From assembly GCF_000002075.1 (NCBI RefSeq), contig NW_004797492.1, positions 43,821 through 107,820 of the forward strand: DNA of 64,000 nt, in the 5' to 3' direction. Every line of letters begins with the position of its first letter. Position 1 is the first letter of the stretch. The notes under the pieces were generated by a model. The model was not told where the DNA came from and did no database searches. It saw only the letters and a program-made list of their open reading frames with translations. The stretch is from Aplysia californica (taxonomy: Eukaryota). Made by a program: the position numbers and the translations under genes. This document shows, piece by piece, positions 6,701 through 30,700 of this stretch.

Positions 6701-9700
6701 AGAATAAAACATCTGACCCTGTAAGCTCTGACAACTTTGAACAGGGCACTGTCCAGGGAGAAGCCTTCGCCGAGAGCGATTGTGTGGATTCAGATTTCAA
6801 TTTACAGGACTTGTTTGGACCAAGTGAAGGGGAAGGACATGCAGATTGTGTCTCCACAAGCATGATCCATTCGGATTTTGTGAACTTTGATGGGAAGGAG
6901 TTTTTGGATATGTGAAGAGACTGCATGCGTTGCACACATGAACTTGCACTGCTTTGTTGATCATGATTTTCTTATTTTCCCTATAGCAAGGTAAGCTACA
7001 AAATGCCAGTAACTGGGAATTTGAACCAAGAGAATCCCTCAGAGCAGGAATCCCCTGCAGTGAATGATGGTGGGGGGAATATGGCCTCGCTCACAGAAGG
7101 TACAGCCACTTCGTCTCTTCCACCAGCGCCAGGCGTGGCTTCAGACAGTGCCAACCAGACGTCATCTGAATCGGCATCTGACAACACCGGTGGCGAGGTG
7201 TCCAGCACCACCGCGGACAATGAGGACCTGGCCGATAACGAGGCCGTCACGGATGCCTCAGACAATCTGCAGTTGCCGGAGCCCGTGGAGTCCACGTCCA
7301 TGGACATCTCCGACTCTCTCGATGGCTTCAAAGATGGCACCGTGAGTCCCCCGCCAGAAGAGGGCCAGGCTCCCTCCTCAAAACACAGCACGTTTACAGC
7401 CACAAACTCTGCGTCCTCCTTCAACAACGGGTTTCAGAGCGCTTTTGCGGCATTCGCGTCTGCTTCGTCTCAGAGCTTCACAGCGACGGGGCAGCATGAA
7501 AGCAGTGCCAATGTATCCGGCACAGCTGCGGGCAGTTCAGCTTATGACGCGGTCAGCACCACAGAGGCAGACCCTGCGGGGGAAGCGTCATCCACCTCGA
7601 CGGATGCGATTGGCTCCACCACCGCCACGGAGCTGCTTGTGTCGTCGGCCATTGACTCTAGTCTGGTCACCACCACCGGAGACAGCACCAGCGGCAGCAG
7701 GATAATGGCGGATGTAGACAGCAGCAGTGTCGTGGCCAGTGAGGCGATGACCGCCATGTCGTCTACGGTGACAGAGACTGCAGACATTGCGGCAGAGAGT
7801 GGTTTCTTCCAGGCTGCTGAGGAACCCTGTGACGCACCACCTGCTAACATTGAAGTTCCGGCCGTCGCAACGGACTTCGAGTCTTCCCCCTTGCCGGGAT
7901 CTTCAGCAGGGGAGGGTTTGACACTGCAGGAATCTCCGCTTGAAGAAGCAGCGTCTTTAGCAGCTGAGGAATCGACTGTGGGGCAAGAGTGTGCAGAAGC
8001 ACAGGAGTCCTCCTCAGGGCAACAGTTGTTACTGGAGACTTTGACAATGTCACAAGCTGAACCAGAACAAGTTGCCGCGGAGACAGGTGCTGCTGGAGAG
8101 CCCACTCTAACCGAGGAAGGACCTGTTGTGACTCAGGCAGAGGCTGTGGAGATTCGAGAAGAGCCTGTGGTGACTCCAGAGGAAGCCATGGTCACTCAAG
8201 AAGAACCCATGGCTGCTCAAGAAGAGCATATGGTGACACAAGAAGAACCTATGGTGACTCAAGAAGAGCATATGGTGACTCAAGAAGAACCTGTTGTGGG
8301 TCCGGAAGAACCTGTAGTGAGCCAGGAAGAACCTGTTGTGACTCAGGAGCCCGGTATGGCTTTGGAGGGAACTGTGACTCCTGAAGTTCCAGTCGTGGAT
8401 TCTGAGCCCACTACGACGGAGGAGTCTGTGGGCACACAAGAACCTATGGCCGTAGAAGAGCCAGCGGTAAGTCAGGAATCTCTGGCTGTTACTTCCGATC
8501 AACAGGAACAACCTCAGGTAGAAATGGTCAGTACAGATGAGCAAGCTGCCGTTGGTTTTCCCGAGCAATTGACCTCGAGTGAAGCTGTGGCTGCCTCATC
8601 AGCGGCTGAGCAGCAGCAGCAGGTTCAGTATTCCGAGAGCCAGCAGCCAGAGGTGCCGTCGCAAGCCGTGTCGGATTCCGTGTACTTCATCCAGATGACG
8701 GACGCCTCCGGGGAAATCGTCACGTCCATCATTGACCCCAACGATATCTCCGCCTACTCTGACTCGATTGTGTACAAACAGTGCATGAAGGCGGACGGTC
8801 AGCTGGAGACCACCATCGTCAGCTCGGGGGGCGTGCTCATGGAGCAGCAGCAGGAGACGGAGCAACAACAGCAGGCCGTCCAGCAGGAGGTCGCTGAGAC
8901 CCAGCAGGAAGAGCAGCAGCAAGTGATTTACGCACACGATCTGAACGGCCAGCTGACGCCCATCGATTCGGCGCAGTCGGCCAACGACGTGGCCCCGCCG
9001 GGCAAACAGTTTGTGTACATGCAGGACTCTAGCGGCCGCATCATCCGCACCATCATGGACGCCAATCAGACGATGGTTCCCGGCCAACAGGTTTACTACA
9101 CACAGAGCGAAGACGGGCAGATCATCACGTCTGTTATGGACTCGGCTTCGGCTGGGATGACGGACGAAGCTACGGCTCAGCAGCAACAACAACAGCAGCA
9201 GCAGCAAGATATGTCCAGCCTAGAGACGCAGCAACAGCAACAACAGCAGCTGCTTCAGTCGACCCCTCAGGTGTCGACGAGTGCGAGCTCCATGGTGGCA
9301 GGCACCAGTGGCTTCTCCATCGATAACAGCATGAGCGGCCTCAGTATGCTGGCAGAGCTCTCCCACCTCACTGCCGGACAGGGTGAGTGCTTGCTTTATG
9401 TTTGTCACGGCCCTGGTCTAGTACTTAGGATGTTGGGCTCGCTACTGAAAAGTCGTGGGTAGTTATTGTCTCCTGCTACGATGACTGATTTCTCAGTTCT
9501 TACGCAGGAAGTCAAAAGATTTCGTCCATTCAGTAACGTCCCCTGCTTTGGGTTAGGTTGAAGGGAAGGCAAGATTTGTAAAATGTGAGGAAACGAGGTG
9601 AAATCGAAGAAACTGCCACTTTTCTGCTGGTTTGGCAATTTTATTGTAATTCTTGTGTTTAGTTACCGAAAGACATTGATTAAAGACACCAAAAAATGTA

Positions 9701-12700
9701 CATTTTCAGTTTCCGAGGACTCTCAAACTATGGAAGTTTTACCAAACTTTGGCAACCATTTTCTCGCTAAATTTACTTCTGAAACCAGGCAACCCCTACC
9801 ACTTTTAATTGAAAAAATTTGGACTTTATATTCAAGATAGATGAATACGATTTTCATCAACAACAAGATAAATGAACAAGCTTCAAAACGATACCAATAA
9901 CTCTGCTTGCCCTAAAACTGACGAGCGCCTGATTCCACAGCATCGTGACACAAATGTGTTGTTTGTACTGACTCGCCACAACCTCCTCCCGCCCACCAAC
10001 TCCGTAACATCCAACATTACAAGTATGTTAGGGACACGCCTCCTGTATGCTGCAACAGACCTATGCATTGTGCTAGAATGTGTCGAGAGAAAAAAGAATT
10101 AACTGAGATTTATTTATTTCCTCATTCGGGACACCTTGTGTTCTTCAGCTTCCACGTCCAGCCTGCCTGAAGCGAGAGGGGCGTCGAGCACAGACAGCAA
10201 CTCGCAGGATGCAGACATGGAAGAGTTCCGGCCGGTTGCCATGGTGACCAGAAGGGTAGCTGGGAGTGAAGGACAGGAGGGTGTCGATGCAGTGAACTCT
10301 GACATCGCGGGGCTTCGTGTGAGCGAAACGGACGCAGGCGCCACTGGTTAGTAGCTGTCCACGAGCGTGTTCCATTATGGAAAACTATGCATGGCTGTCA
10401 ACCAGTATGTGAAAAACTTGTTTAATACGTTTACATCAGTCTGATTATACAGATGTTTTCACGTCAGAAAATACATTTTTTGTTTTCTAGTATAGCTCCT
10501 CACAGACTTGTCAATGCTAAAAAAAAAGTAAACTTTCAAGACTAGATTTGTGAATAAACATTGAACACAAAATCCATAAAATCTATTGTAGTTTTGTTAT
10601 TTACCATAGTTATCTACTGATCATGGATGTATTGGATGCAACAAAATGTGTGTGAATGGTCTGGAGAAAAGTAGCCCACCCTCTTAACATGTTTTTTTAA
10701 AAAGCCTGCAGCTATGTTATATATTACAGTTTTAGCCTCCTTCCTCTTTTTACTTTCCGCCTTTTCATATTTAGGGAGGTGATTTTCTTTGAATTAGGGT
10801 TTATTGTTTTTGTTGTTTGAAAACACCTAGGGGGCTCCAGTTGAGAGTGAACTCAGGTTAAAACAACAACAGAGTGAACTCGGGTTATAAAACCATTTTC
10901 ATTAAGCAGCGTTGGCGATAACTTTTATTAGGGTGACTGTTGGGGAGTTTCCTTGAGCAGGGCGCTATAAATGAAGTTAAAAAGTAGCTTGCGGGGCAGT
11001 GGGTGACCAGTTGTTGGTGTGTGTAGATGGTCAGATCATGTGATGTTTTATGAATGTTTATGTGTTCATGTATACCATTAGGGTGTACAAGTCACGATCT
11101 TCTGCCTACGAACACAACACATACCACTAAATTCCTACCTTAATAGGATCCGCAAGGATACCCCACCCGACTGCCCGCTGTGCGACTGCCAGGATGAAAC
11201 AGTACCACACCACCTCTTTAACTGCCCAGCACTTTGTGACCTGCGTAGCACCTACCTACCTGCCTCCCCAAACATCGGAAATACTCTATACAGCGACAAA
11301 GCACAGCTGATTAAAACCTGCAAATTCTTTGCCATATCGACAGACCGAAGGGCTTGAACCCAAATGGCCGCTGGATCGGAAAAGTAAAGTAAAGTACCAT
11401 TAGGGTGCAAAAGTTCTCCAGAGATGGATAGGTCGAACACAGAAGACTCGAAATCATGCAATAGTTGAACTGTACCCGTGGTCCCGTTTTTTGTGGTTTT
11501 TTTCCTTCATCTTTGTAAGATATCCATCGAACTACTGAGGCTGGTCCCAATGATTTCTAGCTATCCACGTTAAACAGTAAATAGCTTTTGTAACTCTTAC
11601 TAAGACTAAACACTGACTTTACCTCTCCTCCTCGTCCTCGTCAGGCCCTCAAGAGTCTATCAGCAGCAAGCTGATCGCGGAGATGAAGTGCGGCTACGTG
11701 TCCCCGGCCATGACGGTGTCCAAGGACAACCTGTTTGTCCAGTGGCAGAACCTGGACGCCATGTGCTGGATGGACGTGGTGCTCATCATGCTGGTCTACT
11801 CACCCACGCTGCGGCCACTGGTCAACCTGGAGCCCACGCACGAGCTGGCCTCCACCTTGCTCATCACACTGCTCAAGGCCAATCGGCAAGCTCAGGTGAG
11901 TGCTTCGACTAGTGGTAGAATATCCTAGACAGGTCACTCCTGATGTTAGGGGTAGAAGTGTTCTCAGTTTTCTGGGACTTTGTGGCCCCGACCTTGCTCG
12001 TCACACTGCTCAAGGCCAATCGGCAAGCTCTGGTCAGTGCTTAGACTAGTGGTAGAACGTCCTGGACAGGTCACTCCTGATGTTAGGGGTAGAAGTGTTC
12101 TCAGTTTTCTGGGACTTTGTGGCCCCGACCTTGCTCGTCACACTGCTCAAGGCCAATTGGCAAGCTCTGGTCAGTGCTTAGACTAGTGGTAGAACGTCCT
12201 AGACAGGTCACTCCTGATGTTAGGGGTAGAAGTGTTCTCAGTTTTCTGGGACTTTGTGGCACCGACCTTGCTCGTCACACTGCTCAAGGCCAATCGGCAA
12301 GCTCTGGTCAGTGCTTAGACTAGTGGTAGAACGTCCTAGACAGGTCACTCCTGATGTTAGGGGTAGAAGTATGACTTTGTGGCCTCCACCTTGCTCATTA
12401 CACTGCTCAAGGCCAATCGGCAAGCTTGGGTCAGTGGAGGTTTGGCAAGATCTTAAGGAAAGGTATTCTCAACTTTGTGGAGAGGAGTGGTTACGCTTGT
12501 TTTTTCATCGTTGCTTCTATTCATTACACTGCTCCAGGCTTATAGACAAGACCTTTTTTTTGTATTGTGCAGGCGCGTTGGGGAAAAAATTACTCATTGC
12601 AAATTTATTTGAGCAGATATTAATGTACTTGTTGAGGGTGATATTGTCTGGATCCTTTGTTTTTCTCATTGTTCAAAAGTGGCTTTATTGAAGTGCAATT

Positions 12701-15700
12701 TGATATATAATGTGTATAATGTAAAGTAAAATATAGGAAAGGCCAACATTGGGTTAAATGGGTTTTCTTCCTTTGTTTTCTCTATCAACATGTACATCAT
12801 TGTTGAATTTTTGTTTTTCTTCTGTTTGATTCAGGTATTACTTCAGAATTTGCTGAAGAAGAACGGAGGGTCTGAAATCTCTGGCTTACAGACGGGTGCT
12901 GGCAACACAGTGTCCATGCAGGACCCCAAGACCTCCAAGCTGGTGTGCAAGGAGAACATGGACGAGATCGGCAAAGCCATCAACATCCTGTACGCCATGC
13001 GGGAGAAGATCTGGCAGGCCCTGCAGCCTCGACTGCGCTGTGAGCGGGGCAAACACAACAGCCCCGTGCTGGTGCTGCCGCTGCTGGTGAGGGAGAAGCC
13101 CATCATCAAGCAGATGTTCACCATGAACTACCGCTACGTGTTCAAGGTACGTGTTGTGAGAACTAGATGTGTGTTCAAGGTACGTGTTGTGATATAGCTG
13201 TGTGTTGTGAGAACTAGATGTGTGGTCAAGGTACGTGTTGTGATATAGCTGTGTGTTGTGAGAACTAGATGTGTGGTCAAGGTACGTGTTGTGATATAGC
13301 TGTGTGTTGTGAGAACTAGATGTGTGGTCAAAGCACGTGTTGTGATATAGCTGTGTGTGTTGTGAGAACTAGATGTGTGTTCAAGGTACGTGTTGTGATA
13401 TAGCTGTGTGTTGTGAGAACTAGATGTGTGTTCAAAGCACGTGTTGTGATATAGCTGTGTGTTGTGAGAACTAGATGTGTGGTCAAGATGTGTGTTGTGA
13501 GAACTAGATGTGTGTTCAAGGGATACGTGTAGCAGAGATATAGCTGTGTGTTCAAGGTATGTGTTGTGGAACTGTTACATGTTCAAAAATTGGTTGCTCT
13601 AACATGGACATCATTTAGAGAAGTTGCTGTGAGATGTTATTGTGTTCACTGTTAATCCACTGAGATGTCCTGGCTTTGTGATTTCTTTCTCTGTGATTTA
13701 AAAAAAACAAATTTTCTTGCTCCCCCCCAGTGTGAAAAATGTGGGTATTCACAAGACGACAGTCACTCCAAAATCCTCCCCACAATCCCAGCAGTTCCTG
13801 AAGATTTCAACATGACTACGCCATACTTCGAGAGGAACTGCTTTGAGTGCCAGGCGCCCAGTCAGCGCATGGTTATGAAATTTGAAGGGTTAGTCCTGTT
13901 TGTGATTTGAACATGTTGTCAATGTTTTCTTCGGAAAGGCCTTGCATTTTTGTATACCATCAAGCACGCACATTGCGAACATATTTTCAGGTCCCGAATT
14001 TTTTCTAATACACGTATACTCTTTGTATTTAAGATATGTACCAGGGGTAATTTGTACATGGTAAAAAGATTTCTGTGGCCTGTCAATTTAATTCTTTGCT
14101 TGTTAGATTGAAATTGAATTCTGTCCATAATTTTGTGGAAAATAGGAAATTTGGTTTCCATTTTAGCTTTTTGTATTGTAGCTAGTTAGTCCATATAAAT
14201 ACGGTTGTTGGTGATTGCACTAACTAAGCCGGCCAAATCCTTTCTGAATAAGGAGATTGGTGGTATACGGTGCATACAGGAAAGTAGTCTTCTGTTCACT
14301 TCGTAGAGCTGGGCATAATATGTGCTTAGTCGTGGCAGGAAACTTACACTCTGCATCAAGTAATTTTGTACTGACAAAAAAAGAATCTGTGAAGCACGGC
14401 TGTGAAAACAGTGGTTTTCATGGGAAGCCATGGTGTTCTTTTGCCATTTTTGTCAAAATCATGATTTATGGTCAAGGGTCAAGGTCAGTAGTATTTATTT
14501 TCATATTTGTGTGAGTTCTGTGTAATATTTTTATGTGATTTTAAAATAAAATAGCACAATGTTATGTGGTCCTGTATAATTGCCTCCTTTTGTCATGCTG
14601 TTACAATAAGCAAGAGGTGCCAGTTTCCAGTCTTTCTTGACACTGATACATTGCTTTTTCCCTCATTTGTTTGTCTCAGGCTACAAGATTTTGTCCAGAT
14701 GCATTTCGTCAAAGGTCTGCCACACAACAGATTTGATGAACTCAGCTTTGATTTCAACGGAGACCACTATGAAGTCACGGCCGTCGTACATTATAAAAAC
14801 AATCCTGACCATTTTATCGCCTGGGTGCGAAATGCCCCAGGTAAGTACTACTTTTTTGTTGCTTTGTAATTTGTGTCTTTTTGGCCATACACCAAAGCCA
14901 AGCTATACTCCCAAGTCAATGGGAATTATGGGAACACAATTTGATATCTTCTTTACCTTTGTCAAAGGGATTGCACTAACTAAGCCGGCCAACTCTCGTA
15001 CATGTATGGAGCATGTTGGTGGTATACGGTGCATACATCATTTCACTGTCTTCTCACTGACCTAGCTGTGCCAGATTGTGTTCTGTGACAGTTGTGGGAA
15101 GATTGTTACATTGTCTCATGTAGGTGAAAGGATTTAGTTTTGAAAAATCTTGGTCGGAATATGACATAGCAGTAAGTTATTTGGTCTTCTTTGAGCAGTT
15201 TGGCAACCTGCTTATTTGAAAAGCGTAAAAAAAATTATGAGCGTGAAAAATGTTTTCAAGGGAGAAAAGGGTTTCTGAAAGTCCAAGGGGTTGCAATGTA
15301 TTGGAAAGGTTTGAGAGCAGACACTGGATGTCAGATCTTTTCACCTTGGTAATTTTTAAAGATTAGGGAGTCTCTTGGCTGGGTTAAGGGATAGAAGAAG
15401 ATGTCTGAGAACAAATAAGGAAAGAATTCACCATTCCAGAATGTTTCCTCCCCTTTCTTTTTTCTTGCTGCCTTGTTACCACCTTCAGTAACTTATTCTT
15501 TTGGTGTACAGATCAAAATCTTCCATTACATGGGGTTGCACTAACTAAGCCGGCCAACTCTCGTACATTTATGGAGCATGTTGGTGGTATACGGTGCATA
15601 CATCATCTCACTGTCTTCTCACTGACCTAGCTGTGCCAGATTGTGTTCTGTGACAGTTGTGGGAACATTGTTACATTGTCTCATGTAGGTGAAAGAAGGA

Positions 15701-18700
15701 TTTAGTTTTGAAAAGTCTTGGGATTCTTGGTCGAAATATGAAATAGCAGTACGTTATTTGGTCTGCTTTGAGCAGTTTGGTAACGCGCTTTTTGAAATGA
15801 GGATAAAACATTTTAGCATGAAAAATGTTTTCAGGGGGAAAAGGGGTTTCGGAAAGTCCAAGGAGTTGTGATGGAAAGGTTTGAGAGCAGACGGTGGAAG
15901 TCAGATCTTTTTATCTAACTAATTTTTAAAGATTAGGGAGTCCCTTGGCTGGGTTATGGGACAGATGAAGACGTCTGAGAACAAATAAGGAAAACCTTCA
16001 CCATTCTAGAATGCTTCCTCTCAGGCCCCCCCCCCCCCCCCCCCTTTTTTTTTTTCATTGTCTGTTTGATTGGTTGTTCAAAAAAAGGATGTTATGCTGC
16101 TGTGTATGAAAAAAAATTCTGAGAAGACTTGGATCTTGCTGCCTTGTTACCACCTTCAGTAACTTATTCTTTTAGTGTACAGATCAAAATCTTCCATTAC
16201 ATGGGGTTGCACTAACTAAGCCGGCCAACTCTCGTACATATATGGAGCATGTTGGTGGTATACGGTGCGTACATCATCTCACTGTCTTCTCACTGACCTA
16301 GCTGTGCCAGATTGTGTTCTGTGACAGTTGTGGGAAGACTGTTACATTATGTCTCTCTAGATAGAACGAGGACTCGGGGACTGAATTAGTGGTACTTCTG
16401 GACAACAATGGTTGAAGGGAAAAAAATATTTTCCACTATATAAAACTGTCCTTTCTTAGTATGAGCATTATGCTTTTGCCCATGGCAGATGGTACCTGCG
16501 CTTGTTGTTCATTGGTTAGGCTCTTTGCTGTCGCATAAAATGCACATCATGAAATTATTTAATAGTTTACCAACACACACATAAGGGTACATACATCCTC
16601 AAATACAAAATTTACCATCACAGGGTAGCGTTGAACAAAACGTGTCTTTACTTTTCTCAAACACTCTCTCATGTCATAGAATGTTGTGTAGCTGCTTTTT
16701 GTCTCTGGACCTACAATCGAATCTATTTTAAGCAGCCACCTGTCCAAGGGAGCACTAGTTAGAAGACAAATATTGCTCAAAGACTTGCACTAACTAAGCC
16801 GGCCAACTCTCGTACATGTATGGAGCATGTTGGTGGTATACGGTGCATACATCATCTCACTGTCTTCTCACTGACCTAGCTGTGCCAGATTGTGTTCCCT
16901 GACAGTTGTGGGAAGATTGTTACATTGTCTCATGTAGGTGAAAGAAGGATTTAGTTTTGAAAAGTCATGGTCGGAATATGAAATGGCAGTAAGTTATTTG
17001 GTCAGCTTTGAGCAGTTTGGTAACACTTATTTGAAAAGCATAAAAAAAGTTTTTTTTGTGAAAAATATTTTGAAGGAGGGGAAAAGGGGTTTCTGAAAGT
17101 CCAAGGAGTTGTGATGGAAAGGTTTGAGAGCAGATGGCGGAAGTCAGATCTTTTCATCTTGGTAACTTTGAAAGATTAGCAAATCCTTTGGCTGGGTTAA
17201 GGGGCACAAGAAGACATCTGAGAACAAATAAGGAAAGCCTTCACCATTCCAGAATGCTCCCCCCCGGTTTTTTTTCTTCTTTGTGTTAAATAGGCTGTAA
17301 AAAAAAAGAATATGCTGCTGTGTATGAAAAGAAATTCAGAAAGGGCTCAGATCTTGCTGCCTTGTTACCACCTTCAGTAACTTATTCTTTTGGTGTACAG
17401 ATCAAAATCTTCCATTACATGGGGTTGCACTAACTAAGCCGGCCAACTCTCGTACATANNNNNNNNNNNNNNNNNNNNNNNNNNNNNNNNNNNNNNNNNN
17501 NNNNNNNNNNNNNNNNNNNNNNNNNNNNNNNNNNNNNNNNNNNNNNNNNNNNNNNNNNACTTCTTCTTCTTGCACTTTGCATTTTTTAAATGTTGTTTCG
17601 ACTGTTAAAGACTTCCAATTTTTTCCTCAACAATAGGTAGCCATCTCGTTCAATTTCATCTGTTTATAGCAAGTAGCATAAACATACATGAGAGAACATT
17701 AGTTAAAAAACATTCTTCTCAAAGACTTGCACTAACTAAGCCGGCCAACTCTCGTACATGTATGGAGCATGTTGGTGGTATACGGTGCATACATCATCTC
17801 ACTATCTTCTCACTGACCTAGCTGTGCCAGATTGTGTTCTGTGCCAGTTGTGGGAAGATTGTTACATTGAATCTATTTGGAACGGTCACCTGTACAAACA
17901 ACCACTTTACACTTCTTCTTCTTGCACTTTGCATTTTTTAAATGTTGTTTCGACTGTTAAAGACTTCCAATTTTTTCCTCAACAATAGGTAGCCATCTCG
18001 TTCAATTTCATCTGTTTATAGCAAGTAGCATAAACATACATGAGAGAACATTAGTTAAAAAACATTCTTCTCAAAGACTTGCACTAACTAAGCCGGCCAA
18101 CTCTCGTACATGTATGGAGCATGTTGGTGGTATACGGTGCATACATCATCTCACTATCTTCTCACTGACCTAGCTGTGCCAGATTGTGTTCTGTGCCAGT
18201 TGTGGGAAGATTGTTACATTGAATCTATTTGGAACGGTCACCTGTACAAACAACCACTTTACACTTCTTCTTCTTGCACTTTGCATTTTTTAAATGTTGT
18301 TTCGACTGTTAAAGACTTCCAATTTTTTCCTCAACAATAGGTAGCCATCTCGTTCAATTTCATCTGTTTATAGCAAGTAGCATAAACATACATGAGAGAA
18401 CATTAGTTAAAAAACATTCTTCTCAAAGACTTGCACTAACTAAGCCGGCCAACTCTCGTACATGTATGGAGCATGTTGGTGGTATACGGTGCATACATCA
18501 TCTCACTATCTTCTCACTGACCTAGCTGTGCCAGATTGTGTTCTGTGACAGTTGAGGGAACATTGTTACATGGTTTTGTAGACATGGGTGGTTAGCGGGC
18601 GCTCTGATGTAGGAGCATAGTTTGCTCCTTCTTACTTATCGAAACGTTTATCGTCCTTATCTCCTTCCCCCCCTTTTTTTTTTGTTGGTTACTCTCTTGT

Positions 18701-21700
18701 AATATTTCTAATCACTTTTATGGCCTAATTGTTTTGCAAATGCCGTGAAATATGTACTAAAATTTTACTTTAAAAAAAAAAAGCAGCTAAGGTTACTGTG
18801 GGTTTGATTAAGATAGAAAACTGTTCGAAATTAAAATTATTTTGATTCCTTGCTGTTTCTCTTTCTAAAAAATCCCCAAAGAATTTACGGCACATATGTG
18901 ACTTTTTTTTGTTTAGCTAGTGTTGTAAATCTACTACAACTTTTGTTATTTGAATTCCCCACTTTGGAGTATATAAAGTTTTTGTTTTGGATTTCATTTT
19001 TCCTTTTAAAGTCCGTACTGGACGTAGGTTTATAAAAAAAATTCCCATTGTGTTTTCCAAAGTTATGGTTTTGGATTTGTTTGATCCCAGGCCCTTACTG
19101 GATGGAGTGTGACGACCTGAAGTCTGTGATCACACGCTACCAGCCCGTGCTGCCCAACATCCCGCCCAGCCAGGTACACATGGTGATGTGGGAGCGCCGG
19201 CTCACGCCGCAGCACACGCTGGTCATGCGTGACACGGAGGATACGCGCGTCCTGGCCTCCCTCGTGCTCACCGTGCAGCAGCCCGCGGGCATGTCCGGCA
19301 CGCAGCAGGGAGCGGATGCTTCAGGTCATTGGGGGGGTTTGTGTGTATGTGTATGGCTTTTCTTTTTGTGTGTTTGTGAGTGTATGTGTGTGTGTGGCTT
19401 TTCTTTTCGTGTGTTTGTGAGTGTGTGTGGTTGGCTTTTCTTTTTGTGTGTTTGTGAGTGTGTGTATGTGTGGCTTTTCTTTTTGTGTGTTTGTGAGAGT
19501 GTGTGTGTATGTGTGGCTTTTCTTTTTTGTGTGTTTGTGAGAGTGTGTGTGTGTGTGTGGCTTTTTGTTTTGTGTGTTTGTGAGAGTGTGTTTGTGTATG
19601 CGTGGCTTTTCTTTTTGTGTTTGTGAGAGTGTTTGTATCTGTGTCATTGTGTTTGTGAGAGTGTGTGTGTATCTGTGTCATTGTGTTTGTGAGAGTGTGT
19701 GTGTATCTGTGTCATTATGTTTGCGAAAGTGTGTGTATCTGTGTCATTGTGTTTGTGAGAGTGTGTCGTGCTGTCATCTTTGTGTTATTTATAAGCAGGT
19801 GTCATGGAAACAACTTGGTGATGGTTTCAATTCTGAGGGTTTTTTGTTTGACTTACTAGAAGGTGTGACTTAACTCACTTGCGACTGGGCCCTTTCACCA
19901 GCCACAAGCGTTGAAGACTGGCGTTTTGGGGGGTATTTCAATAAATCACCACAACTCTCAGAATTACCCTATTGTAATCATTTTTTGACACAGTAAAGTA
20001 ACATTCAAGCTTAATCTAATACAAAAAACTAAAGTTGTCTAAGTGTAATACTTTAATTTGTATGGTTTTTTAAAGATTGGCATGAATTTGATTTTCGAAA
20101 AATTTCCAGAGACGTGACAAGTAGAATGAAATTCACTGCAACAACAAAAATAAAAGTTCAAAGTGTTCTGGTTTGATTTGTATACATGTGCAAGTGTTTG
20201 GTGAAAATATAAAAGCTGGTCTGTGCATTGATTCAGACCCATACACTGAATTACATGAGACAGATGTACGGCACGACGTTGTGATTTCGTTGCGCGAAAA
20301 ACAACACCGGTACTAGTGCTAGATCTAGCCCTAGAACTACGACTCGGGCCGTGTTCGGGTACATATCCAGGATCCTAACTATTAGACACATCATATTCTG
20401 AGACACTAGAACTAGTAAAACGCACAGAAGTATAGAAAACGGCGAAATTATGTGATTCTTGTTCATGCGACTTCTTCGACCGTTACTACGACGCGACTGT
20501 CGGATTACTATGAGCTGTATAGAAAAAAACAAAGCGCGAGTTCCGGTCTGTTCAACCCCAGTTGGGGTCACTGTCCTTCACCTTCAATAACTTAAAAACT
20601 ACCAGCCCCAGAGATACGAAACAAAGTCTAAGTAGCTCAGGCTTGGCCAAACAAGGGTACGAGGCGGGTCTCGCGATCCGTGCGTGATTTGTAGAGCGAA
20701 AAAAAATTTCCAAAGTTGGTCACGTCATGGCGGGGGTCACGCAACTGTTGTGTGACCCGTCTGAAGTGAGTTAAAGATCACTTGGGGAGCTATCAGAATA
20801 CTGTTATACAAATTAAGATCTTCCTTTCCTTTGTCAAAGGACTTGCACTAACTAAGCCGGCCAACTCTCGTACATGTATGGAGCATGTTGGTGGTATACG
20901 GTGCATACATCATCTCACTGTCTTCTCACTGACCTAGCTGTGCCAGATTGTGTTCCGTGCCAGTTGTGAGAAGACTGTCACATTATCCGTTGGGGAAAGA
21001 AAAAATTAATTTGTGAGGTGTAATTATGGTCTGAATCTGAGAAGAGGCAAGATTTTGAACGTCCAGGGAGCAAAAAGGTTGCCTTTAAACAGAGAGACTG
21101 CCAGGTGGCTAGAATCCTCCTGAGAACTTGGATAAATTTGCTCTGACCCGGGAATACCTGTGAATTAGAGAATATCTGTAAATTGCTCAGGGACAATTTA
21201 TAAAGTTGTTTAATATTTTAAAGTTTAGTAGTGAAATCCAGTGAAGTGTTGTCATGTGAGTTTGTTCCATTTGGCAGGTGTGCCCAAAACCACAGCGACA
21301 GGTCTTCCTTCTTCAAGCCCGGCGGGCGCCACGTCTGCCAGCACACTCCTGTCGGGCCTGATGAACCAGACGCAGACGTTCTCCCCGTACACGCGAGGTC
21401 GTGGCAGAGGCGGGCGGGGCACCCGGGGGGCCAGGGGCACGGGCCGGGGCAGGGGAAGCAACACCATCATCAGGCAGCGGGCGCCGGTCAGCAGCAGCAT
21501 CCAGCTGACGGGGGCGGCTGCCACGTCNNNNNNNNNNNNNNNNNNNNNNNNNNNNNNNNNNNNNNNNNNNNNNNNNNNNNNNNNNNNNNNNNNNNNNNNN
21601 NNNNNNNNNNNNNNNNNNNNNNNNNNNCTGTGCCCGTCCAGCGGCCCCGAGGCTCGCCCCAGATTCTGCGTCTGCCCATGTCGGCCCTGGCCAACTCTGG

Positions 21701-24700
21701 CCTGTCCTTGAGGGGAGCCTCCACCACGGGGGCCGGCACCAGGCTGGTACTGGTGGGCGGGAACAGCGGCGGTCAAGCGGGCAGCGTGGCGGGCTCTGGC
21801 TCTGGGGGCACCACCAACAAGGTGATCATGGTTCGCTCCCAGGGAGGCAGTATGAGCAACATGTCTCCCCAGCAGCTGCTTCAGCTACTGCAGGTACGTA
21901 GGCACGCAGGCACGCACACTCACAGGGGGGACTGTCACAAGTGGGTGGTGGGTGGCTGCTATTTTTCTTTCCTCTCCAACATGTTTTGTACTTATCTCTC
22001 CTCTCAAACATGTTTTGTACTTATCTCTCCTCTCCAACATGTTTTGTACTTATCTCTCCTCTCCAACATGTTTTGTACTTATCTCTCCTCTCCAACATGT
22101 TTTGTACTTATCTCTCCTCTCACACATGTTTTGTACTTATCTCTCCTCTCCAACATGTTTTGTACTTATCTCTCCTCTCAAACATGTTTTGTACTTATCT
22201 CTCCTCTCCAACATGTTTTGTACTTATCTCTCCTCTCAAACATGTTTTGTACTTATCTCTCCTCCTCCTTTTCTTTGTCTACATCTCTCTAGTGTTACAC
22301 ATCTAACCTTCTGCACTTAGATGACCTCTTGTTATGCAAGTACCATAAAATTGACTAAATCTAAAGGGACTGTTGAATTTGTCGTAGACGGCCGCCCATT
22401 GTCAAGGAGAAAAATGGTTGGCTTAGATAGGTGGATGTTTTAAACAGTGTTTAGGATATAGTCAAATAACAAGAGTGGGATTGGGAAGTGATTCTTTGTA
22501 GAGATGATTGTCTTGGACAAGGTTTTCACTGTGATAATGGCTTGCTGTCTTGGACAAATGTGACTGTCATAATGGATCAGAGGTGATAGTTCCTTCAGGC
22601 TTGGGTACAGGTTTGAAAATCATGACATTTTGGTGCAGTAAAAAGGCTTGCTAGATTTGATGGGTTTTATTTTTAAAATAAATTAGAAATGTAGATTGGT
22701 TTTTTAAAATCAGTTGTTGACTTCAATATATCTGAGAGAGTTACATGCATGTTTAAAACTCTTGAAAAATGTGGTTACTCGAGAGATTTATTTAATTTCG
22801 TTGCTTTAGATTGATTTTTTTTTGTGGTGTGTTTTTTTATTTGCCAGCGACGGTTTATCGTTCTCTTGCTTGAAAGGAGGGCGCCACTGTTAAATCCTAC
22901 TTTTTTTTCTCTCTCTGTTGTTTCTGTCCGTCTGTTTTACTTCTTCCCTGCAATATATGACCGTTGTTGTGTGGATGTGCTTCTCTTAACTCAAATTGTA
23001 TGTCCACAGCGAACAGGAGCCATTAGTCAGTCTGGAGGTGTCCGGGTCACGACCACGCTGGGCAACGGTAGTCAGGTGTCGGCTGTGACCCAAGAGAGCG
23101 ACACTTCGGTGGGGACGGGCGTGGAGGAAGGCGCCTCTGCCGATGTTGCTGGCACGCAGACCACTTTGGAGCATGAGAGCACCGAGTCAGCAACAGAACC
23201 TCTGGGCGAGTCGGGCGGTGCCGACAGCCTGATGGACGTCTCGGAGGGGAATCAGACGGCAGGGGAGGCTGATACATCGGCTTATTTAAACACAACGCTA
23301 CCCTCGGCGGGGTCAGAAAACGCGACAGAAGCAACCACCATCTCATCCACCTCCACTTCTTCGGAAAATCCCATCGTCTTATCTCCGGAGCCGCCTGTGA
23401 CAAGTTCTGTGAGTGCTGTCGATGTGGCCGGCGAGCCGCAGCAGCAGTCAGCAGCTACCGTTGCTGCTGCCGCGGGGAATGTGAAAACGCTGACCCTGAG
23501 TGAAGGTCAGGCCAGTTCTGGTGGCGCCCGCTACATTTCCATCCCCAACCCCAACGGCAAGGGCAGCATTCTCACCCAGCTGGTGTTGAAAGGCGGCAAA
23601 ATGGTTCTAGTCCCTGTCACCAAGAACGTTCCCGCACAGGAAGCGGGCTCGTCGGTTCTCCGGATCCCCGGCTCCACAGCCGCGGGTTCCCCTACCGTGT
23701 CCATCCGTGTCCCGGGCGGTTCGAGCCAGTCCTCCCTGGCGTCTCTGGTCACCTCGGCCATCTCGTCTTCGGCCACGAGCACGCCTCAGGCTGTGCAGCA
23801 GTCCCCCACGGTGAGCATGCTGACCTCACAGACGCCGTTCGCCACGCTCGCCGCCACCACCGCGTCTGTCAGCACGTCCACGGCTAGCACGCCGGGTGTC
23901 CGCTATGTGTCTATCCCGGGCAGCAGCGGCAGCAAGAGGACCATCCAGCTGATCAGTGTACCGCGGGGGGCGCCCGGTGCCGGGGGTACCTCCTCTTCTG
24001 TGCTCGGGGGCTCGCAGGCCGGCAGCCAGAAGACAATTATCGTGAGTCCCAGCGGGGTGCAGTCTTCCACCTCCCCGGCCACCTACGTCACGCGGCTGGT
24101 CACCTCGGCCGACACAGCGCAGCAGCAGCCGGGGAGCGACGAACAGCCGCAGCAGCAGATGGTGAGCTCGCAGCAGGGCAACATTGTGATCCGTGAGCTG
24201 AAGAGTGACGGCACCACCACCACCACCACCACCCTCCCGCCGCCCACAATGGCCGACTCGGGGGCTCAGACCCCCACGGTGCTCCGCCAGGTGAGAGATG
24301 GGCTGGTGGCAAATCCCGGTGCTTTCTTGTCCTATCTCCATTTTTAATAACCGTGAAAAACAGTTCAGAACAGAGTGAGCTTAAAGAAGAAGACAAATTT
24401 TCACTGTTTAATAAAAATGGAGATACAACAAGAAAGCACTGAGGTCACGAGATTCTAGAACTAAATGGCAGAGTGGTCTTTGTGTGTACAGCTGGCCCCA
24501 TTCGACTTTACCAGTCAACATTGATCATTTTTTTACTGTTTGCTATTTGAAGCGTGGCAGAGCCATTCGAATGCCGTGTGATTTTTAAAATATTTTTGAA
24601 AGGGAATGGATTTTTGTCTCATATTTTTCAAACCGTCATACAATTACAGCATATTATATCTAAAATTGAGATAAATACAGAAGTACTCTGTACTTGAAGG

Positions 24701-27700: not shown

Positions 27701-30700
27701 GTCAGGCCACGGCTTCTGGCCCGAGCTGCGTTTTGCGGCTGGAAGCAGCCGATGAGTTAAATGACCTTATTGTGTTGCAAGTGCCGTAAAACTCTTACTA
27801 AAACTAAAGGGTACATTGTGACCTATTTTCTCCACCTGTCCCTCTCGTTTTCCCCCCAGGTACATCTTGCCCGGCTCCAACAGTACTCAGACAATCCTGC
27901 AGACGTCTGGCCAGAGCGTGGGCAAGTCGTTCACCGCCCTGTCTTCCTCGGGCACCATCATCGGAGGTCAGCTGACCCCTGCGACCCCGTCTGCCGCAGT
28001 GGACCCCAACCTCCTGAGCCCGGCGGAACCCATGATGGTGGACAGCGCGGGCCAGACGGGCCCCACCATCAGCCTGTTGGCCCCGCAGCGACGAGCCAGC
28101 CAGGAGGTGGACAGCACAGAGTACATCCCACTGGGCACCAGGGGCAGGGGGAGAGGTCGCGGCCGGGGGAGAGGTCGCGGGGGGCGCATGCCTCGGGGCA
28201 GAGGTCGCCAGCAGCTGGTGTGGGGCAGTGGGAGCGACACAGAGTACAGCCCCTCCTCCTCCACGTCTGCCGCTACGACCTCCTCCTCCTCCTCCGCGGT
28301 ACTTTCGGGGAGAGGAGGGAAAGCCAGCGCCGGTACACTGTCGGAGCTGCGGCAGATCGGGGCCCACGTGATCGAGTCGAGCAGCGAGGCGGTGGACGGC
28401 GTACCCGTTGTCTCCATCCCAGATTTCACAGACGCTGGCACCCAGGCAGAGTCTGTCAGCGCTGCCGAGTCGTTAGCGGCGGAAAATGCCGCGGCTGTCC
28501 TCAGCACGGCAACGACCAGTTCCGTGGAGGGCGGCCATCATCAGGCTGAGGGCGTGTCTCTTCTGGCCCAGCAGTCACTGCTCCAGGAGGGTAACCATGG
28601 CGACGACAGCGACGCCTCGGCCCAGAACCAGCAAGAAGGCCCGCGGGTCATCACTCAAAGTATTCCTTCCATCAAGGCCAACCACGGCTTTGACATCCTC
28701 ACACAGGGCATCCTGGGCTCGGCAGCCAGCGGGCGCCAGGGCGTGGCTACCTCCCCCAAACCCAAGACAGGCCGCAGTCTCCTGACAGGCGCACCGGCCA
28801 AAATCTCGTCGTTAACCACGTCTGCCGGTCTGTCGGCCCTGACATCGGCGGCGTCAAAGACCCAGGCCAGCTTGTCCATGGGCCACTCGGTGAGCCAGGC
28901 GGAGATCGAGACTCTGATCCAAGCTGCCGAAGCTGCGGCAAAACCGGCCAAACTGGCATCGTCTGGTGCAGGGGAGTCAGCACAACCGTCGCAGGCTGTG
29001 TCTGGCGAGGAGGGGACGTCGGTGGAGGACCCAGATTCTGCTCTCGCGGGAGAGTTTGGATTGAGTCCACGAGCGGAGGATCAGTCAGAGCTGAACGTGC
29101 CCCAGCAGAGTGCTGACGAGCCTGAGCGTATGGACACGGAGGAGGAGGAGGAGAGAATCGTCAACGTGGACGAGTCGAAAGTGAGTGCGGCCGAGCGGTA
29201 CCGCATGCCCACAGAACTGTTCCAGCCGGACGAGGAGTCTCCGGAGAAACCCGTGAGACAGGAAGAGCCCGTCGGCAAACTGGGCTCGGAACTGCCCATG
29301 AAGATTTTTCAGGAGTCTGAGGTGGGGCCGCAAGAGGAGGCGAGAGTGAGCGAGGATATTGTCGTCTCGCCGGGGGAAGATTTAGACCAGCTGAGCAGCC
29401 CCAAGCCGTCCGTGGTGCCAACAGAGAAGGTGAAGGAGGTGGGGGTGGGCAAAGATGTGGAAGATCTGGTGGACATTGAGTCAGCGGAGGAAGGCGTACT
29501 CAGTCCGGCGGTAGTAGAGGAGTCTGTGCCGGCTCCCAAGAAAAAGGGCGGGAGACGAGGCCGGCCAAAAGGTGGAGGGGCGAGGAGGAAGTCGAGGAGC
29601 ATCAGCGCATCGGACAAAGGAGAAGACGGCGAGGAGCAAAGTAAACGGAAGGAGTCGGCAGCTGGGGCGCTCTCGCCTTCCAAACTTTCCCTGGGGGAGC
29701 AGATCTCCAAGATAGCGTACAGCATGAAGGCTGGCAAGGAGGCTGCAGGGGGTTCGAGTCCCGCAAAGAAGTCTCCTGTGAAGTCTGTGGGTGGGTTTGC
29801 CACTGACTTGCTCATGGAGACGGAGAGAGAAGAAGCGGAGGAACTCAGTAAACAGAATCTGCTACGGGAAGAACTCGGTGAAAAGACTCAAGTTGAGGAA
29901 GAGCAAGGTAAGGAGAACCCTCCGGAAGAAATTTGTGAAGAGAAGAAGGAAGTTGAGGAGGTGGTGGAGGAGAAAGTGGAAGATTCATCTGTACCAGAAG
30001 TGTGTTCCGACATTGTGGCCAAGGAGGAGAAAGAGGAGGAGGAGGAGAAGGCAGACACTTGTGTGTTGAAGCAGTCGGAGAGTATGGAGGTTGACGTGGT
30101 GATGGAGGAGGCAGAAGAAAGTGGCGAGGTGACAGACAGCAAGGAGGTGAGTGTTTTGAACAAAGTGCCTGCGACAGACTGGAGGAAGTGGGTCTACCTG
30201 CCGGCTGTGGTACCCTGCCCTAAGAGGAAAGTGGTGTGGTCGGAGGGTGGCCACGGGGAGGAAGGTGAAGAGGAGGAGGAGGAGGAAGAGTGTGCTTATT
30301 CGAGACCTTTTAATTACAGAGTTCTTTCCGGAAAACTCAGGAAAATGTGTCCTCGACACGCATCCTTGGGACCACGACAGGAGTCATTCACCACACCACC
30401 GATTGTGTTTGAGGCGTTTGACGCGAGGACAGACAAGAAGCCTGAAGACCCGCACGCTGTGGTTGTGCGTAGGTCGAGGAGGGCCCTGGAGAGGCCGCGG
30501 CGTGACCCGGCCAAAGACCCACGGGTCATCCCGCTAATGGCGGACAGCGATGCAGACCCGGCGTGTATTGGCGGCTCGGTGGTGAGCAGCGCCCTCATGG
30601 AGCGCGAGATGTTCTGTGGCGTGGTGGTGAAGGAGCGGCGGGATCTGGTGGACTGGACCTGTGGGGCCGACGAACTGGAGGAAGACGAGGAGGCGGACTC

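What the first reader, a model, noticed from the sequence alone, without database searches (positions are those of the whole stretch)
14215..20985. Amplified array of at least 10 box H/ACA guide RNAs inside the introns of the Cajal-body SUMO protease gene USPL1
Seen: a 137-143 nt element recurs at 14215, 14971, 15536, 16207, 16785, 17425 (gap-truncated), 17727, 18079, 18431 and 20843. All copies are sense to the host and lie in three consecutive introns around the catalytic His and Asp exons. Each has hairpin - ANANNA - hairpin - ACA+3 nt, and high identity is concentrated within those limits. Known: this is the H/ACA sno/scaRNA architecture, and USPL1 is a Cajal-body protein needed for snRNA transcription. 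Inference: a dosage-amplified guide RNA co-transcribed with an RNP-biogenesis regulator. I do not know of USPL1 being described as such a host.
Basis: partly seen in the sequence, partly recalled or inferred. Interest (0 to 1): 0.92.

Follow-up and report, generated by a model that had tools for sequence, protein, structure and literature searches.

The report
Intronic H/ACA snoRNA cluster in USPL1
Three neighbouring introns of a sea-slug-type USPL1 (SUMO protease) gene carry about ten sense-strand copies of one small RNA built like a pseudouridylation guide for ribosomal RNA; it is a real but fairly ordinary intronic snoRNA gene cluster, a layout already known from flies and rice and seen elsewhere in this same genome.

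Summary
There are eight near-identical 143-nt copies, one copy cut off by the assembly gap, and one diverged 137-nt paralogue. All lie on the + strand in three consecutive introns of a Peptidase_C98 (USPL1-type) gene. BLAST and a covariance model find the element nowhere else in the 927-Mb genome, so it is not a SINE or MITE. Copies are 96.5% identical inside the 143 nt but about 61% identical in the 100 nt on either side. All have hairpin, H box (ACAUCA or ACAGGA), hairpin, ACA. The 5' hairpin's stems and pocket are almost invariant even in the diverged paralogue, while its apical part has changed but still pairs. Its pocket lies 14 nt from the H box and pairs (7+3 bp) around 18S U1217, the equivalent of human 18S pseudouridine 1232. 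The 3' hairpin's target is unresolved. There is no CAB box and no snRNA target, so nothing supports a Cajal-body scaRNA or a functional tie to USPL1. USPL1-like genes of Haliotis, Mactra and a third mollusc assembly lack the element. Evidence for a discrete ~140-nt RNA is thin. An earlier scan note reports similar H/ACA clusters in domino/EP400 introns of this genome. Verdict: new members of a known kind; moderate-to-low interest.

The parts
14215..14351 (+). Diverged H/ACA paralogue (137 nt): same 5' hairpin guide, H box ACAGGA, different 3' hairpin, ACA at 14346-14348. Lies in intron 13888-14678.
   Evidence: (R1 105.5 bits). A 171-nt transcript contig covers 14205-14375 with 0 mismatches.
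14971..15113 (+). H/ACA copy 1 of the main family (143 nt), 130 nt after the His-exon donor.
   Evidence: 180 bits
15536..15678 (+). H/ACA copy 2. G>C at element position 131 breaks one pair of the 3' lower stem.
16207..16349 (+). H/ACA copy 3.
16785..16927 (+). H/ACA copy 4.
17425..17458 (+). First 34 nt of a further copy, cut off by the assembly gap.
17459..17558 (.). Assembly gap (100 N, length only estimated). The two sides are not in register for a 100-nt gap. Copy number across it is unknown. Not filled.
17559..18573 (+). 2.9 tandem units of 352 bp, 99% matches overall. Each holds one H/ACA copy, at 17727-17869, 18079-18221 and 18431-18573. The third copy has U>A in the putative 3' guide strand and G>C in the lower stem.
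20843..20985 (+). H/ACA copy in the next (inferred) intron, about 290 nt before a putative acceptor at 21277.
13729..13887 (+). Host exon (Peptidase_C98 profile positions 131-186).
14679..14841 (+). Host exon with the catalytic His region (Peptidase_C98 profile positions 190-238).
   Evidence: (E 9.4e-17)
19091..19323 (+). Host exon with the C-terminal part of the protease domain. The start is shown by transcript contigs; the end is a putative donor CAG|GTCATT.

Best explanation
These are genuine box H/ACA snoRNA genes arranged as an intronic gene cluster. The cluster arose by local tandem duplication inside a USPL1-type host gene in the lineage of this heterobranch mollusc.

Inferred mechanism, from the established snoRNP pathway: each copy is transcribed as part of the host pre-mRNA. 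Dyskerin, Nop10, Nhp2 and Naf1/Gar1 bind the two hairpins and the H and ACA boxes. Splicing and debranching release the intron, and exonucleases trim it back to the protected ~140-nt core. For the intron with eight copies, cuts between copies are also needed; otherwise snoRNA-capped longer RNAs remain.

The mature snoRNP most likely uses its highly constrained 5' hairpin to convert 18S U1217 to pseudouridine. That site is the counterpart of human 18S pseudouridine 1232. The 3' hairpin is less constrained, and its target is open. The best rRNA candidates are 28S U1747 for the main family and 28S U1728 for the paralogue.

Having many copies per host transcript may compensate for a weakly expressed host. 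This is inference.
For: Shown by tools:
- Locus restriction and single orientation: BLAST gives 10 hits and covariance model R1 gives 9, all in this locus on the + strand.
- Sharp selective boundary: 96.5% identity in the core against 61% in both flanks when pairs within the 352-bp tandem are left out (65%/63% over all pairs), although three unrelated flank types exist.
- Architecture: hairpin-ACAUCA-hairpin-ACA, with 93.6% of cells paired against 35-48% when partners are slid. Pair 78/133 occurs as G-U, A-U and G-C.
- Constraint pattern: the paralogue 14215 keeps 22/22 and 23/25 positions of the 5' lower stem, pocket strands, base of the upper stem and H-box region. It keeps only 9/23 apical positions, which still form a stem, and 25/67 in the 3' hairpin. 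Among the main copies, 2 variable columns fall in the 5' hairpin and 10 fall from the hinge through the 3' hairpin.
- Target of the 5' hairpin: the pocket top is 14 nt from the H box. It pairs 7 WC + 3 bp around 18S U1217 (GCC-UG-CGGCUUA). 88 of 2000 shuffled guides do as well.
- Site identity: U1217 lies 16 nt 5' of the GAC-U-CAAC uridine, as human psi1232 (fragment CC-psi-G, 1230-1233) lies 16 nt 5' of m1acp3psi1248.
- Conservation of that site: psi1232 is 98% modified in human and was found in all nine vertebrates tested (PMC6182160; PMC6984369; PMC10164566).
- Rfam: the only families returned on this strand are sub-threshold SNORA70 matches to the 5' hairpin of both paralogues. The SNORA70 consensus carries the same AA.UAAGCCG strand.
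- Host: it is expressed and spliced as modelled. One 171-nt contig matches 14205-14375 exactly. A polyA raw-read run placed 2 of its 4 reads inside copy 14215 and none on the exons.
- Known layout: intronic H/ACA clusters are described for Drosophila and rice (PMC2780460; Huang et al. 2004, cited in PMC5932544).
Against: - No Rfam family reaches its gathering score.
- No orthologue was found in any other species, so there is no between-species covariation. All covariation comes from young paralogues.
- Folding z-scores are modest, -1.4 to -2.3.
- The target match on the 3' guide strand is only 3 bp. The junction was chosen among several, so the roughly 4% shuffle figure is optimistic.
- The same 5' strand also has 11 contiguous bp with 18S 1326-1336, so the assignment is not unique.
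- The 3' hairpin's best 28S sites map to human U2419 and U2400, which are not known pseudouridines.
- A discrete ~140-nt RNA with an end 3 nt after ACA was not shown. The available runs are polyA libraries or contigs of uncertain type. Some contigs run from a copy into the spacer.
- Some copies carry stem-breaking changes and may be decaying.
Confidence: 0.8

Rival explanations
1. The eight-copy intron mainly yields longer snoRNA-capped RNAs (sno-lncRNAs of the SLERT type) or acts in cis on host splicing. Its product is then not, or not only, free guide snoRNPs.
For: Two or more snoRNAs in one intron are the known precondition for sno-lncRNAs (PMC11028025). In run X9, contigs cover a copy plus 96 nt of upstream spacer and the 3' part of a copy plus about 120 nt of downstream spacer, at depth 3-7 against 11 on exons. 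The intron stretch outside the array (14854-14967) has depth 0.
Against: This rests on three low-depth contigs in one run whose RNA nature is only guessed. They could be pre-mRNA or DNA carry-over. Drosophila intronic H/ACA clusters do give individual snoRNAs (title of Huang et al. 2004, seen). The reading does not exclude ordinary guide function.
Confidence: 0.1
2. A Cajal-body scaRNA that modifies spliceosomal snRNAs and is functionally coupled to its host USPL1. This is the spirit of the first reader's reading.
For: USPL1 is a Cajal-body SUMO isopeptidase needed for snRNA transcription (Schulz 2012 and Hutten 2014, as cited in PMC4802181). The element is co-transcribed with it.
Against: Neither apical loop contains UGAG (loops GUACAUGUAUG and UUGUGU). 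No pocket-compatible match was found to this genome's U1, U2, U4, U5 or U6. The highest scores use the strands of the lower stem itself and leave no stem. The constrained pocket fits 18S. USPL1-like genes of three other molluscs lack the element.
Confidence: 0.04
3. A recent, functionless tandem duplication of intron DNA, or decayed snoRNA pseudogenes, that merely looks like an H/ACA RNA.
For: The 352-bp units are 99-100% identical, so very young. Several copies carry stem-breaking substitutions. There is no cross-species conservation and no clear mature RNA.
Against: Flanks have diverged to about 60% and fall into three unrelated types, while the 143-nt core stays at 96.5%. The old paralogue keeps exactly the guide-relevant parts of the 5' hairpin and lets the rest drift. 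All defining boxes and distances are intact in every full copy.
Confidence: 0.05
4. A dispersed mobile element (SINE or MITE).
For: It is short, repeated and structured.
Against: Genome-wide BLAST and covariance-model searches find it only here and only on one strand.
Confidence: 0.01

Closest known systems
[quoted passage not shown] 2004, J Mol Biol 341:669; 2005, RNA 11:1303) and in rice
   Same: Several H/ACA snoRNAs, often isoforms made by tandem duplication, lie sense-oriented in introns of one protein-coding host, with more than one per intron.
   Different: Different phylum, host gene and snoRNA family. Here up to eight near-identical copies share one intron. I could not read those papers' text, only titles and a secondary statement.
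Rfam SNORA70 (U70), RF00156
   Same: The 5' hairpin has a similar lower stem, the same pocket strand AA.UAAGCCG (complementary to 18S CGGCUUA) and a similar H-box region. It is the only family returned on this strand for both paralogues.
   Different: Scores are 18.4 and 14.5 bits against a 40-bit threshold. The 3' hairpin is unrelated. One guide position differs (C for U), which shortens the match to that 18S site. No RF00156 hit was found anywhere in the genome. Homology is a hypothesis.
SNORD116/SNORD115 tandem arrays in SNHG14 (mammals)
   Same: A locally amplified, near-identical snoRNA family is co-transcribed from one host (abstracts).
   Different: Those are C/D box RNAs, one per intron, in a non-coding imprinted host and without rRNA targets. 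Here they are H/ACA RNAs, many per intron, in a coding host and with a plausible rRNA target.
H/ACA-ended sno-lncRNA SLERT
   Same: Two or more H/ACA snoRNAs share one intron, which can protect the intervening RNA.
   Different: No stable spanning RNA has been shown here.
domino/EP400 intronic H/ACA clusters of this same genome (scan note s1-758145)
   Same: The same genome, the same layout, and amplified H/ACA families in introns of a nuclear regulator gene.
   Different: Other families and another host. I did not examine that locus.

Membership tests
box H/ACA snoRNA | Hairpin-hinge-hairpin-tail secondary structure | tested here: met
   The minimum-free-energy folds of four copies give two hairpins. 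93.6% of cells are paired on the named structure, against 35-48% when partners are slid.
box H/ACA snoRNA | H box ANANNA in the hinge directly after the 5' hairpin | tested here: met
   ACAUCA in all main copies and ACAGGA in 14215, starting 2 nt after the lower stem.
box H/ACA snoRNA | ACA triplet after the 3' hairpin, 3 nt from the RNA's 3' end | tested here: inconclusive
   ACA is invariant in all 9 full copies, lies 1 nt after the stem, and conservation stops about 3 nt later. The RNA's real 3' end was not mapped.
box H/ACA snoRNA | Pseudouridylation pocket whose top lies 14-16 nt before the H or ACA box | tested here: met
   5' hairpin: 14 nt (element base 51 to the H box at base 65). 3' hairpin: 15 nt for the best model.
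box H/ACA snoRNA | Bipartite complementarity of the pocket to rRNA around a U, ideally a known pseudouridine | tested here: met
   The 5' hairpin pairs 7+3 bp around 18S U1217, the equivalent of human psi1232. The 3' hairpin is inconclusive: its 28S U1747 and U1728 sites map to human U2419 and U2400, not known pseudouridines.
box H/ACA snoRNA | Stable ~130-150-nt RNA bound by dyskerin, Nop10, Nhp2 and Gar1 | not testable with these tools
   The only hints are a 171-nt contig over 14205-14375 and 2 polyA reads inside copy 14215.
H/ACA scaRNA (Cajal-body-specific) | CAB box (UGAG) in the terminal loops | tested here: not met
   The apical loops are GUACAUGUAUG and UUGUGU in the main copies and UCUGAAU and AUA (minimum-free-energy fold) in 14215. 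None contains UGAG.
H/ACA scaRNA (Cajal-body-specific) | Pocket complementary to a spliceosomal snRNA | tested here: not met
   A scan against this genome's U1, U2, U4, U5 and U6 gave only matches with wrong geometry or matches that use the lower-stem strands. Minor-spliceosome snRNAs were not tested.
Rfam SNORA70 (RF00156) | Covariance-model score at or above the 40-bit gathering score | tested here: not met
   18.4 bits (14215) and 14.5 bits (14971), covering the 5' hairpin only.
SINE/MITE-type dispersed repeat | Many copies genome-wide in both orientations | tested here: not met
   All BLAST and covariance-model hits lie in this one locus on the + strand.
USPL1 (Peptidase_C98), the host gene | Peptidase_C98 domain across the exons | tested here: met
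   Four exons hit PF15499 at profile positions 2-50, 62-126, 131-186 and 190-238. tblastn with proteins that their sources name 'Ubiquitin specific peptidase like 1' [Mactra antiquata] (P0011) and 'Ubiquitin-specific peptidase-like SUMO isopeptidase domain-containing protein' (P0001) maps the same exons.

The most novel reading that the evidence does not exclude
The eight-copy intron is processed into H/ACA-capped sno-lncRNAs, or it titrates H/ACA core proteins co-transcriptionally. Either way, output of the Cajal-body regulator USPL1 would be coupled in cis to snoRNP assembly capacity. A second unexcluded point: a lineage-specific U-to-C change in the guide gives the 5' pocket strand 11 bp with 18S 1326-1336, next to the helix-34 ac4C/psi region. 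That could add a second 18S contact or a new modification site.
Probability: 0.1. Interest if true: 0.65.

Novelty: new member of a known kind. Interest (0 to 1): 0.35.

Why it matters
It adds unannotated H/ACA snoRNA genes to a neurobiology model-type mollusc genome, since no Rfam family captures them. It gives a candidate guide for an 18S pseudouridine (human psi1232) that was only recognised in 2016-2018. It is also a clean example of snoRNA birth by local tandem duplication and of host switching: USPL1 is the host here but not in three other molluscs. It does not reveal a new mechanism, and the appealing link to Cajal bodies is not supported.

Tried and rejected
- Rfam at gathering thresholds on the whole window: no hit. 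In E-value mode the only hit at an element on this strand was sub-threshold SNORA70; a SNORA67 match at E 7.7 lies on the minus strand of copy 16785, and the other five were chance matches to unrelated families elsewhere in the region.
- RF00156 on the whole genome: no hit.
- snRNA targets: rejected on geometry. The U5 U58 and U1 U135 'matches' pair with both strands of the 3' lower stem.
- 28S U3513 and 18S U1710 for the 3' hairpin: rejected, because 6-9 nt are left unpaired at the pocket top.
- My first guess, from memory, that the 28S sites equal human psi1847/1849 or psi2826/2830 was wrong. RNase T1 fragments in the Taoka supplement place them at human U2400 and U2419, which are unmodified.
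- Orthologue search. Short contigs holding the His exon of closer relatives (L027/L028 at 88% exon identity, L029-L032 at 69%) gave only E 0.35-8 matches without boxes. A third mollusc assembly (GCA_000327385.1; L033), the Haliotis rubra gene (L154) and the Mactra antiquata gene (L155) gave nothing. P0001 and P0006 could not be located as genes.
- Metagenome pattern scan with the two guide strands: more than 120 hits. None of the 80 loci fetched scored with the model, so they are chance.
- Only polyA or untyped runs were available, so RNA ends could not be mapped.


Full report

Yes. The repeat finder returns a family of eight 180-nt copies between 14936 and 20987, and Tandem Repeats Finder returns a 352-bp unit present 2.9 times at 17559-18571.

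Trimmed to that core, seven distinct main copies and the diverged copy align over 143 columns without internal gaps among the main copies. Full main copies lie at 14971, 15536, 16207, 16785, 17727, 18079, 18431 and 20843, each 143 nt. A 34-nt stub at 17425-17458 runs into the N gap. A 137-nt paralogue sits at 14215-14351. All are on the + strand.

**2. The assembly gap (tested as asked)**

The left edge of the gap stops at element position 34. The right edge, at 17559, starts in the spacer of the 352-bp unit, at a point that lies 41 nt after a copy's end in the later units. One interrupted copy would need about 150 nt rather than the nominal 100, and any number of extra units would also fit.

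Continuity and copy number across the gap are therefore unknown. The stub is counted only as a stub. The gap lies in an intron, so frame is irrelevant. It was not filled.

**3. Is it a dispersed repeat?**

No. BLAST of one copy against the whole 927,310,431-base assembly gives 10 matches, all in this locus and all on the + strand. A covariance model (R1) built from the eight aligned sequences finds 9 matches at E<=1. These are the same places, with the eight main copies at 174-180 bits and the paralogue at 105.5 bits.

**4. The host gene**

Exon-by-exon translations, taken by reference and not joined, hit Pfam Peptidase_C98 (the USPL1 SUMO isopeptidase family) at profile positions 2-50, 62-126, 131-186 and 190-238.

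A HMMER search with the 54-residue His exon finds 148 relatives. Their sources name three of them as follows:
- P0001: 'Ubiquitin-specific peptidase-like SUMO isopeptidase domain-containing protein' (UniRef A0A2C9KSI5).
- P0011: 'Ubiquitin specific peptidase like 1 [Mactra antiquata]'.
- P0006/P0149: an uncharacterised Haliotis rubra protein.

tblastn of these proteins on the window maps exons at 7003-9387, 11644-11898, 12832-13155, 13729-13887, 14679-14841 and 19091 to about 19320.

Transcript contigs from three runs join 13887 to 14679 (GT..AG) and continue after 14841 with letters that occur at 19092. So three things follow:
- Copy 14215 lies in intron 13888-14678.
- Seven full copies and the stub share the one intron 14842-19090.
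- Copy 20843 lies after the last protease-domain exon. A donor-like CAG|GTCATT at 19323 and an acceptor-like TTTGGCAG|G at 21277 make it intronic, but that intron is inferred, not shown.

The genome's size and contig number match my memory of the Aplysia californica AplCal3.0 assembly. That is memory, not a tool result.

**5. Is the core more than a duplicated piece of intron?**

Yes. Among the eight main copies, mean pairwise identity is 96.5% in the 143-nt core. It is 65% in the 100 nt upstream and 63% in the 100 nt downstream, or 61% on both sides when pairs inside the young 352-bp tandem are left out.

The upstream flanks fall into three unrelated types. In a three-way alignment of whole units the core is 93-100% invariant while the spacers are mostly 53-90%. 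Something keeps exactly these 143 nt alike, either selection or conversion confined to them.

**6. Anatomy**

Each copy folds into two hairpins:
- A 5' hairpin with a lower stem (UGCACU/GGUGCA), an internal loop and an upper stem (GCCAAC/GUUGGU).
- The hinge ACAUCA (ANANNA); this is ACAGGA in the paralogue.
- A 3' hairpin.
- ACA, 1 nt after the stem.

On the structure I named, 93.6% of cells form standard pairs, against 35-48% when the partners are slid by 1-3 columns. Three pairs show changes on both sides. Pair 78/133 occurs as G-U, A-U and G-C. These sequences are young paralogues, so this is weak covariation.

The pattern of constraint says more. The paralogue 14215 keeps 22 of 22 positions of the 5' lower stem, 5' pocket strand and base of the upper stem. 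It keeps 23 of 25 positions of the 3' side and H-box region. It keeps only 9 of 23 apical positions, which nevertheless still form a stem (UCCUU/AAGGA instead of CUC/GAG), and only 25 of 67 positions in the hinge and 3' hairpin.

Among the main copies, 2 variable columns fall in the 5' hairpin: one in the apical loop, and one that keeps a U-G pair. Ten fall from the hinge through the 3' hairpin, and two more fall in the tail after ACA. The 5' hairpin's guide-relevant parts are thus the most constrained part of the element.

**7. Targets**

I took 18S, 28S, U1, U2, U4, U5 and U6 from this genome with Rfam models. I then scanned them for bipartite pairing around a U, with the pocket top 13-16 nt from the box.

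*5' hairpin.* Both guide strands abut the upper stem, and the pocket top is 14 nt from the H box. The only good match is 18S U1217: 5'-GCC-UG-CGGCUUA-3', with 7 Watson-Crick pairs on the 5' guide strand and 3 pairs on the 3' strand. 88 of 2000 shuffled guides score as well, and the junction was chosen among a few, so this alone is only suggestive.

U1217 lies 16 nt before the U of GAC-U-CAAC. In human 18S, psi1232 lies in the RNase T1 fragment CC-psi-G (1230-1233), 16 nt before m1acp3psi1248 in AC-psi-CAACACG. So this is the same site.

Three papers bear on psi1232:
- It is 98% modified in human cells (PMC6182160).
- It is seen by cryo-EM (PMC10164566).
- It was detected in all nine vertebrates examined (PMC6984369).

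The same 5' strand also has 11 contiguous pairs with 18S 1326-1336 (CUUAGUUGGUG). A U at 1324 would then sit in the pocket, but 4 guide bases would be left unpaired at the pocket top. That U corresponds to human U1339, 2 nt after ac4C1337, and is not a known pseudouridine. I treat it as a secondary, unexplained complementarity.

*3' hairpin.* The best geometry-compatible matches are these:
- 28S U1747 (ACA-UG-GGUCAGU, 7+3 Watson-Crick, 15 nt from ACA) for the main family. 64 of 2000 shuffles do as well.
- 28S U1728 (CCA-UG-UGAACAG, 7+3, 13 nt from ACA) for the paralogue. 46 of 2000 shuffles do as well.

The two sites are 19 nt apart in one conserved stretch, which is a notable coincidence. I mapped them to human numbering with the Taoka fragments as anchors: AUCmUUG at 2336-2341, UAmGmCmAAAUAUUCAAACG at 2349-2365, then Am2388, Um2402, Cm2409 and Gm2411, all landing on the right letters. 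They correspond to human U2419 and U2400, which are not pseudouridines in human. The two models also do not use homologous guide positions. The 3' hairpin's target is therefore unresolved.

*snRNAs.* No acceptable match was found. The top scores (U1 U135, U5 U58) pair with both strands of the 3' lower stem and would leave no stem. Neither apical loop holds a CAB box (UGAG). So there is no support for a scaRNA.

**8. Relation to known families**

No Rfam family reaches its threshold. With permissive settings on 921 nt, the only families returned are SNORA70 for both paralogues, at 18.4 and 14.5 bits against a 40-bit cut-off. The matches start exactly at the element's first base and cover only the 5' hairpin.

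In that alignment the SNORA70 consensus carries AAUUAAGCCG where the element has AACUAAGCCG. This is the strand complementary to 18S CGGCUUAAUU. A distant relation of the 5' hairpin to SNORA70 is therefore a reasonable hypothesis, but family membership is not met. RF00156 finds nothing anywhere in this genome.

**9. Expression**

No listed holder is on record as RNA except three polyA raw-read runs. On 13600-15300 the results were as follows:
- The host exons are well covered and spliced.
- In X4, one 171-nt contig (depth 6.4 against 28 on exons) matches 14205-14375 exactly. That is the paralogue plus 10 nt upstream and 24 nt downstream.
- The polyA raw run X21 laid only 4 reads: two inside copy 14215, one over the 3' part of copy 14971 and its spacer, and none on the exons.
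- In X9, contigs run from a copy into its spacers, while the intron outside the array has no depth.

This shows transcription of the region in the sense of the host. It hints at stability of the core, but it does not show a discrete ~140-nt RNA.

**10. Is USPL1 a conserved host?**

No evidence for that was found. R1 with filters off finds nothing better than E 0.25, and those matches lack boxes. The loci searched were these:
- A 21-kb locus around the USPL1-like gene of assembly GCA_000327385.1 (Lottia gigantea by my memory of that accession).
- The whole Haliotis rubra gene (21 kb) and the whole Mactra antiquata gene (54 kb).
- Short contigs around the His exon of two closer relatives.

Rfam finds no snoRNA in any of those three gene loci. 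The hosting and the amplification are therefore lineage-specific.

Its follow-up called that layout known from flies and rice. [quoted passage not shown] 2004). No paper in the held library names USPL1 as a snoRNA host.

**11. How it most likely works**

*Shown:* sense-strand intronic position in an expressed, spliced host; all H/ACA sequence and structure features; locus restriction; selective conservation of the core and especially of the 5' guide; complementarity to a conserved 18S pseudouridylation site.

*Inferred from the established snoRNP pathway:* co-transcriptional binding of dyskerin, Nop10, Nhp2 and Naf1; release by splicing and debranching; exonucleolytic trimming; nucleolar pseudouridylation of 18S U1217.

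*Open:* how eight copies in one intron are separated. The choices are endonucleolytic cuts, as in plant and yeast polycistrons, or persistence as snoRNA-capped RNAs, as reviewed in PMC11028025. Also open are what the 3' hairpin does, and whether the multiplicity serves dosage.

**12. Verdict**

This is a real, previously unannotated H/ACA snoRNA family in an intronic tandem cluster. It is a new member of a known kind. The Cajal-body reading is not supported. Interest 0.35.

Noticed in passing
window 13151-13516: A 51-bp tandem repeat (7.1 copies, 93% matches) starts right at the end of the host exon 12832-13155 and fills part of the following intron.
   Followed up: no
window 11900-12420: ORFs with nearly the same translation recur every 137 nt just after the Cys exon. 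This suggests a 137-bp tandem duplication that copies exon-like sequence. A relative's protein (P0001) aligns weakly to 12382-12486.
   Followed up: no
window 13961-14017: A ~40-55-nt stretch in the intron matches many unrelated, highly covered transcript contigs (depth up to 551) with 2-4 mismatches, on both strands. It is probably part of a dispersed repeat.
   Followed up: no
window 19340-19766: A TG-rich minisatellite (43-nt and 34-nt units, 85-90% matches) lies directly after the last protease-domain exon.
   Followed up: no
window 21528-21627, 35670-35769, 42625-43439: Three further assembly gaps. The first interrupts a putative RG-rich exon downstream of the array.
   Followed up: no
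window 27822-31523 and 57037-63129: Very long open frames on the + strand (1234 and 2031 codons). Whether they are C-terminal USPL1 exons or other genes was not examined.
   Followed up: no
G000:C516:518000-552000 (own genome, not the window): U1 and U2 snRNA genes alternate in a tandem unit of about 3.08 kb, at least 7-8 times. The same pairing is seen on C2468.
   Followed up: no
G000:C2100 (own genome): In the rDNA contig, two full 18S copies lie only 1.5 kb apart (17013-18862 and 20347-22197) with no 28S between them. This is probably an assembly artefact.
   Followed up: no
window 15120-15135 and the same place in the other long units: A donor-like UAG|GUGAAAG motif sits 7-10 nt after the ACA+3 end of several copies. 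Contigs in run X9 read through it unspliced. An earlier scan note (s1-759977) also flags AG|GT motifs between copies.
   Followed up: partly
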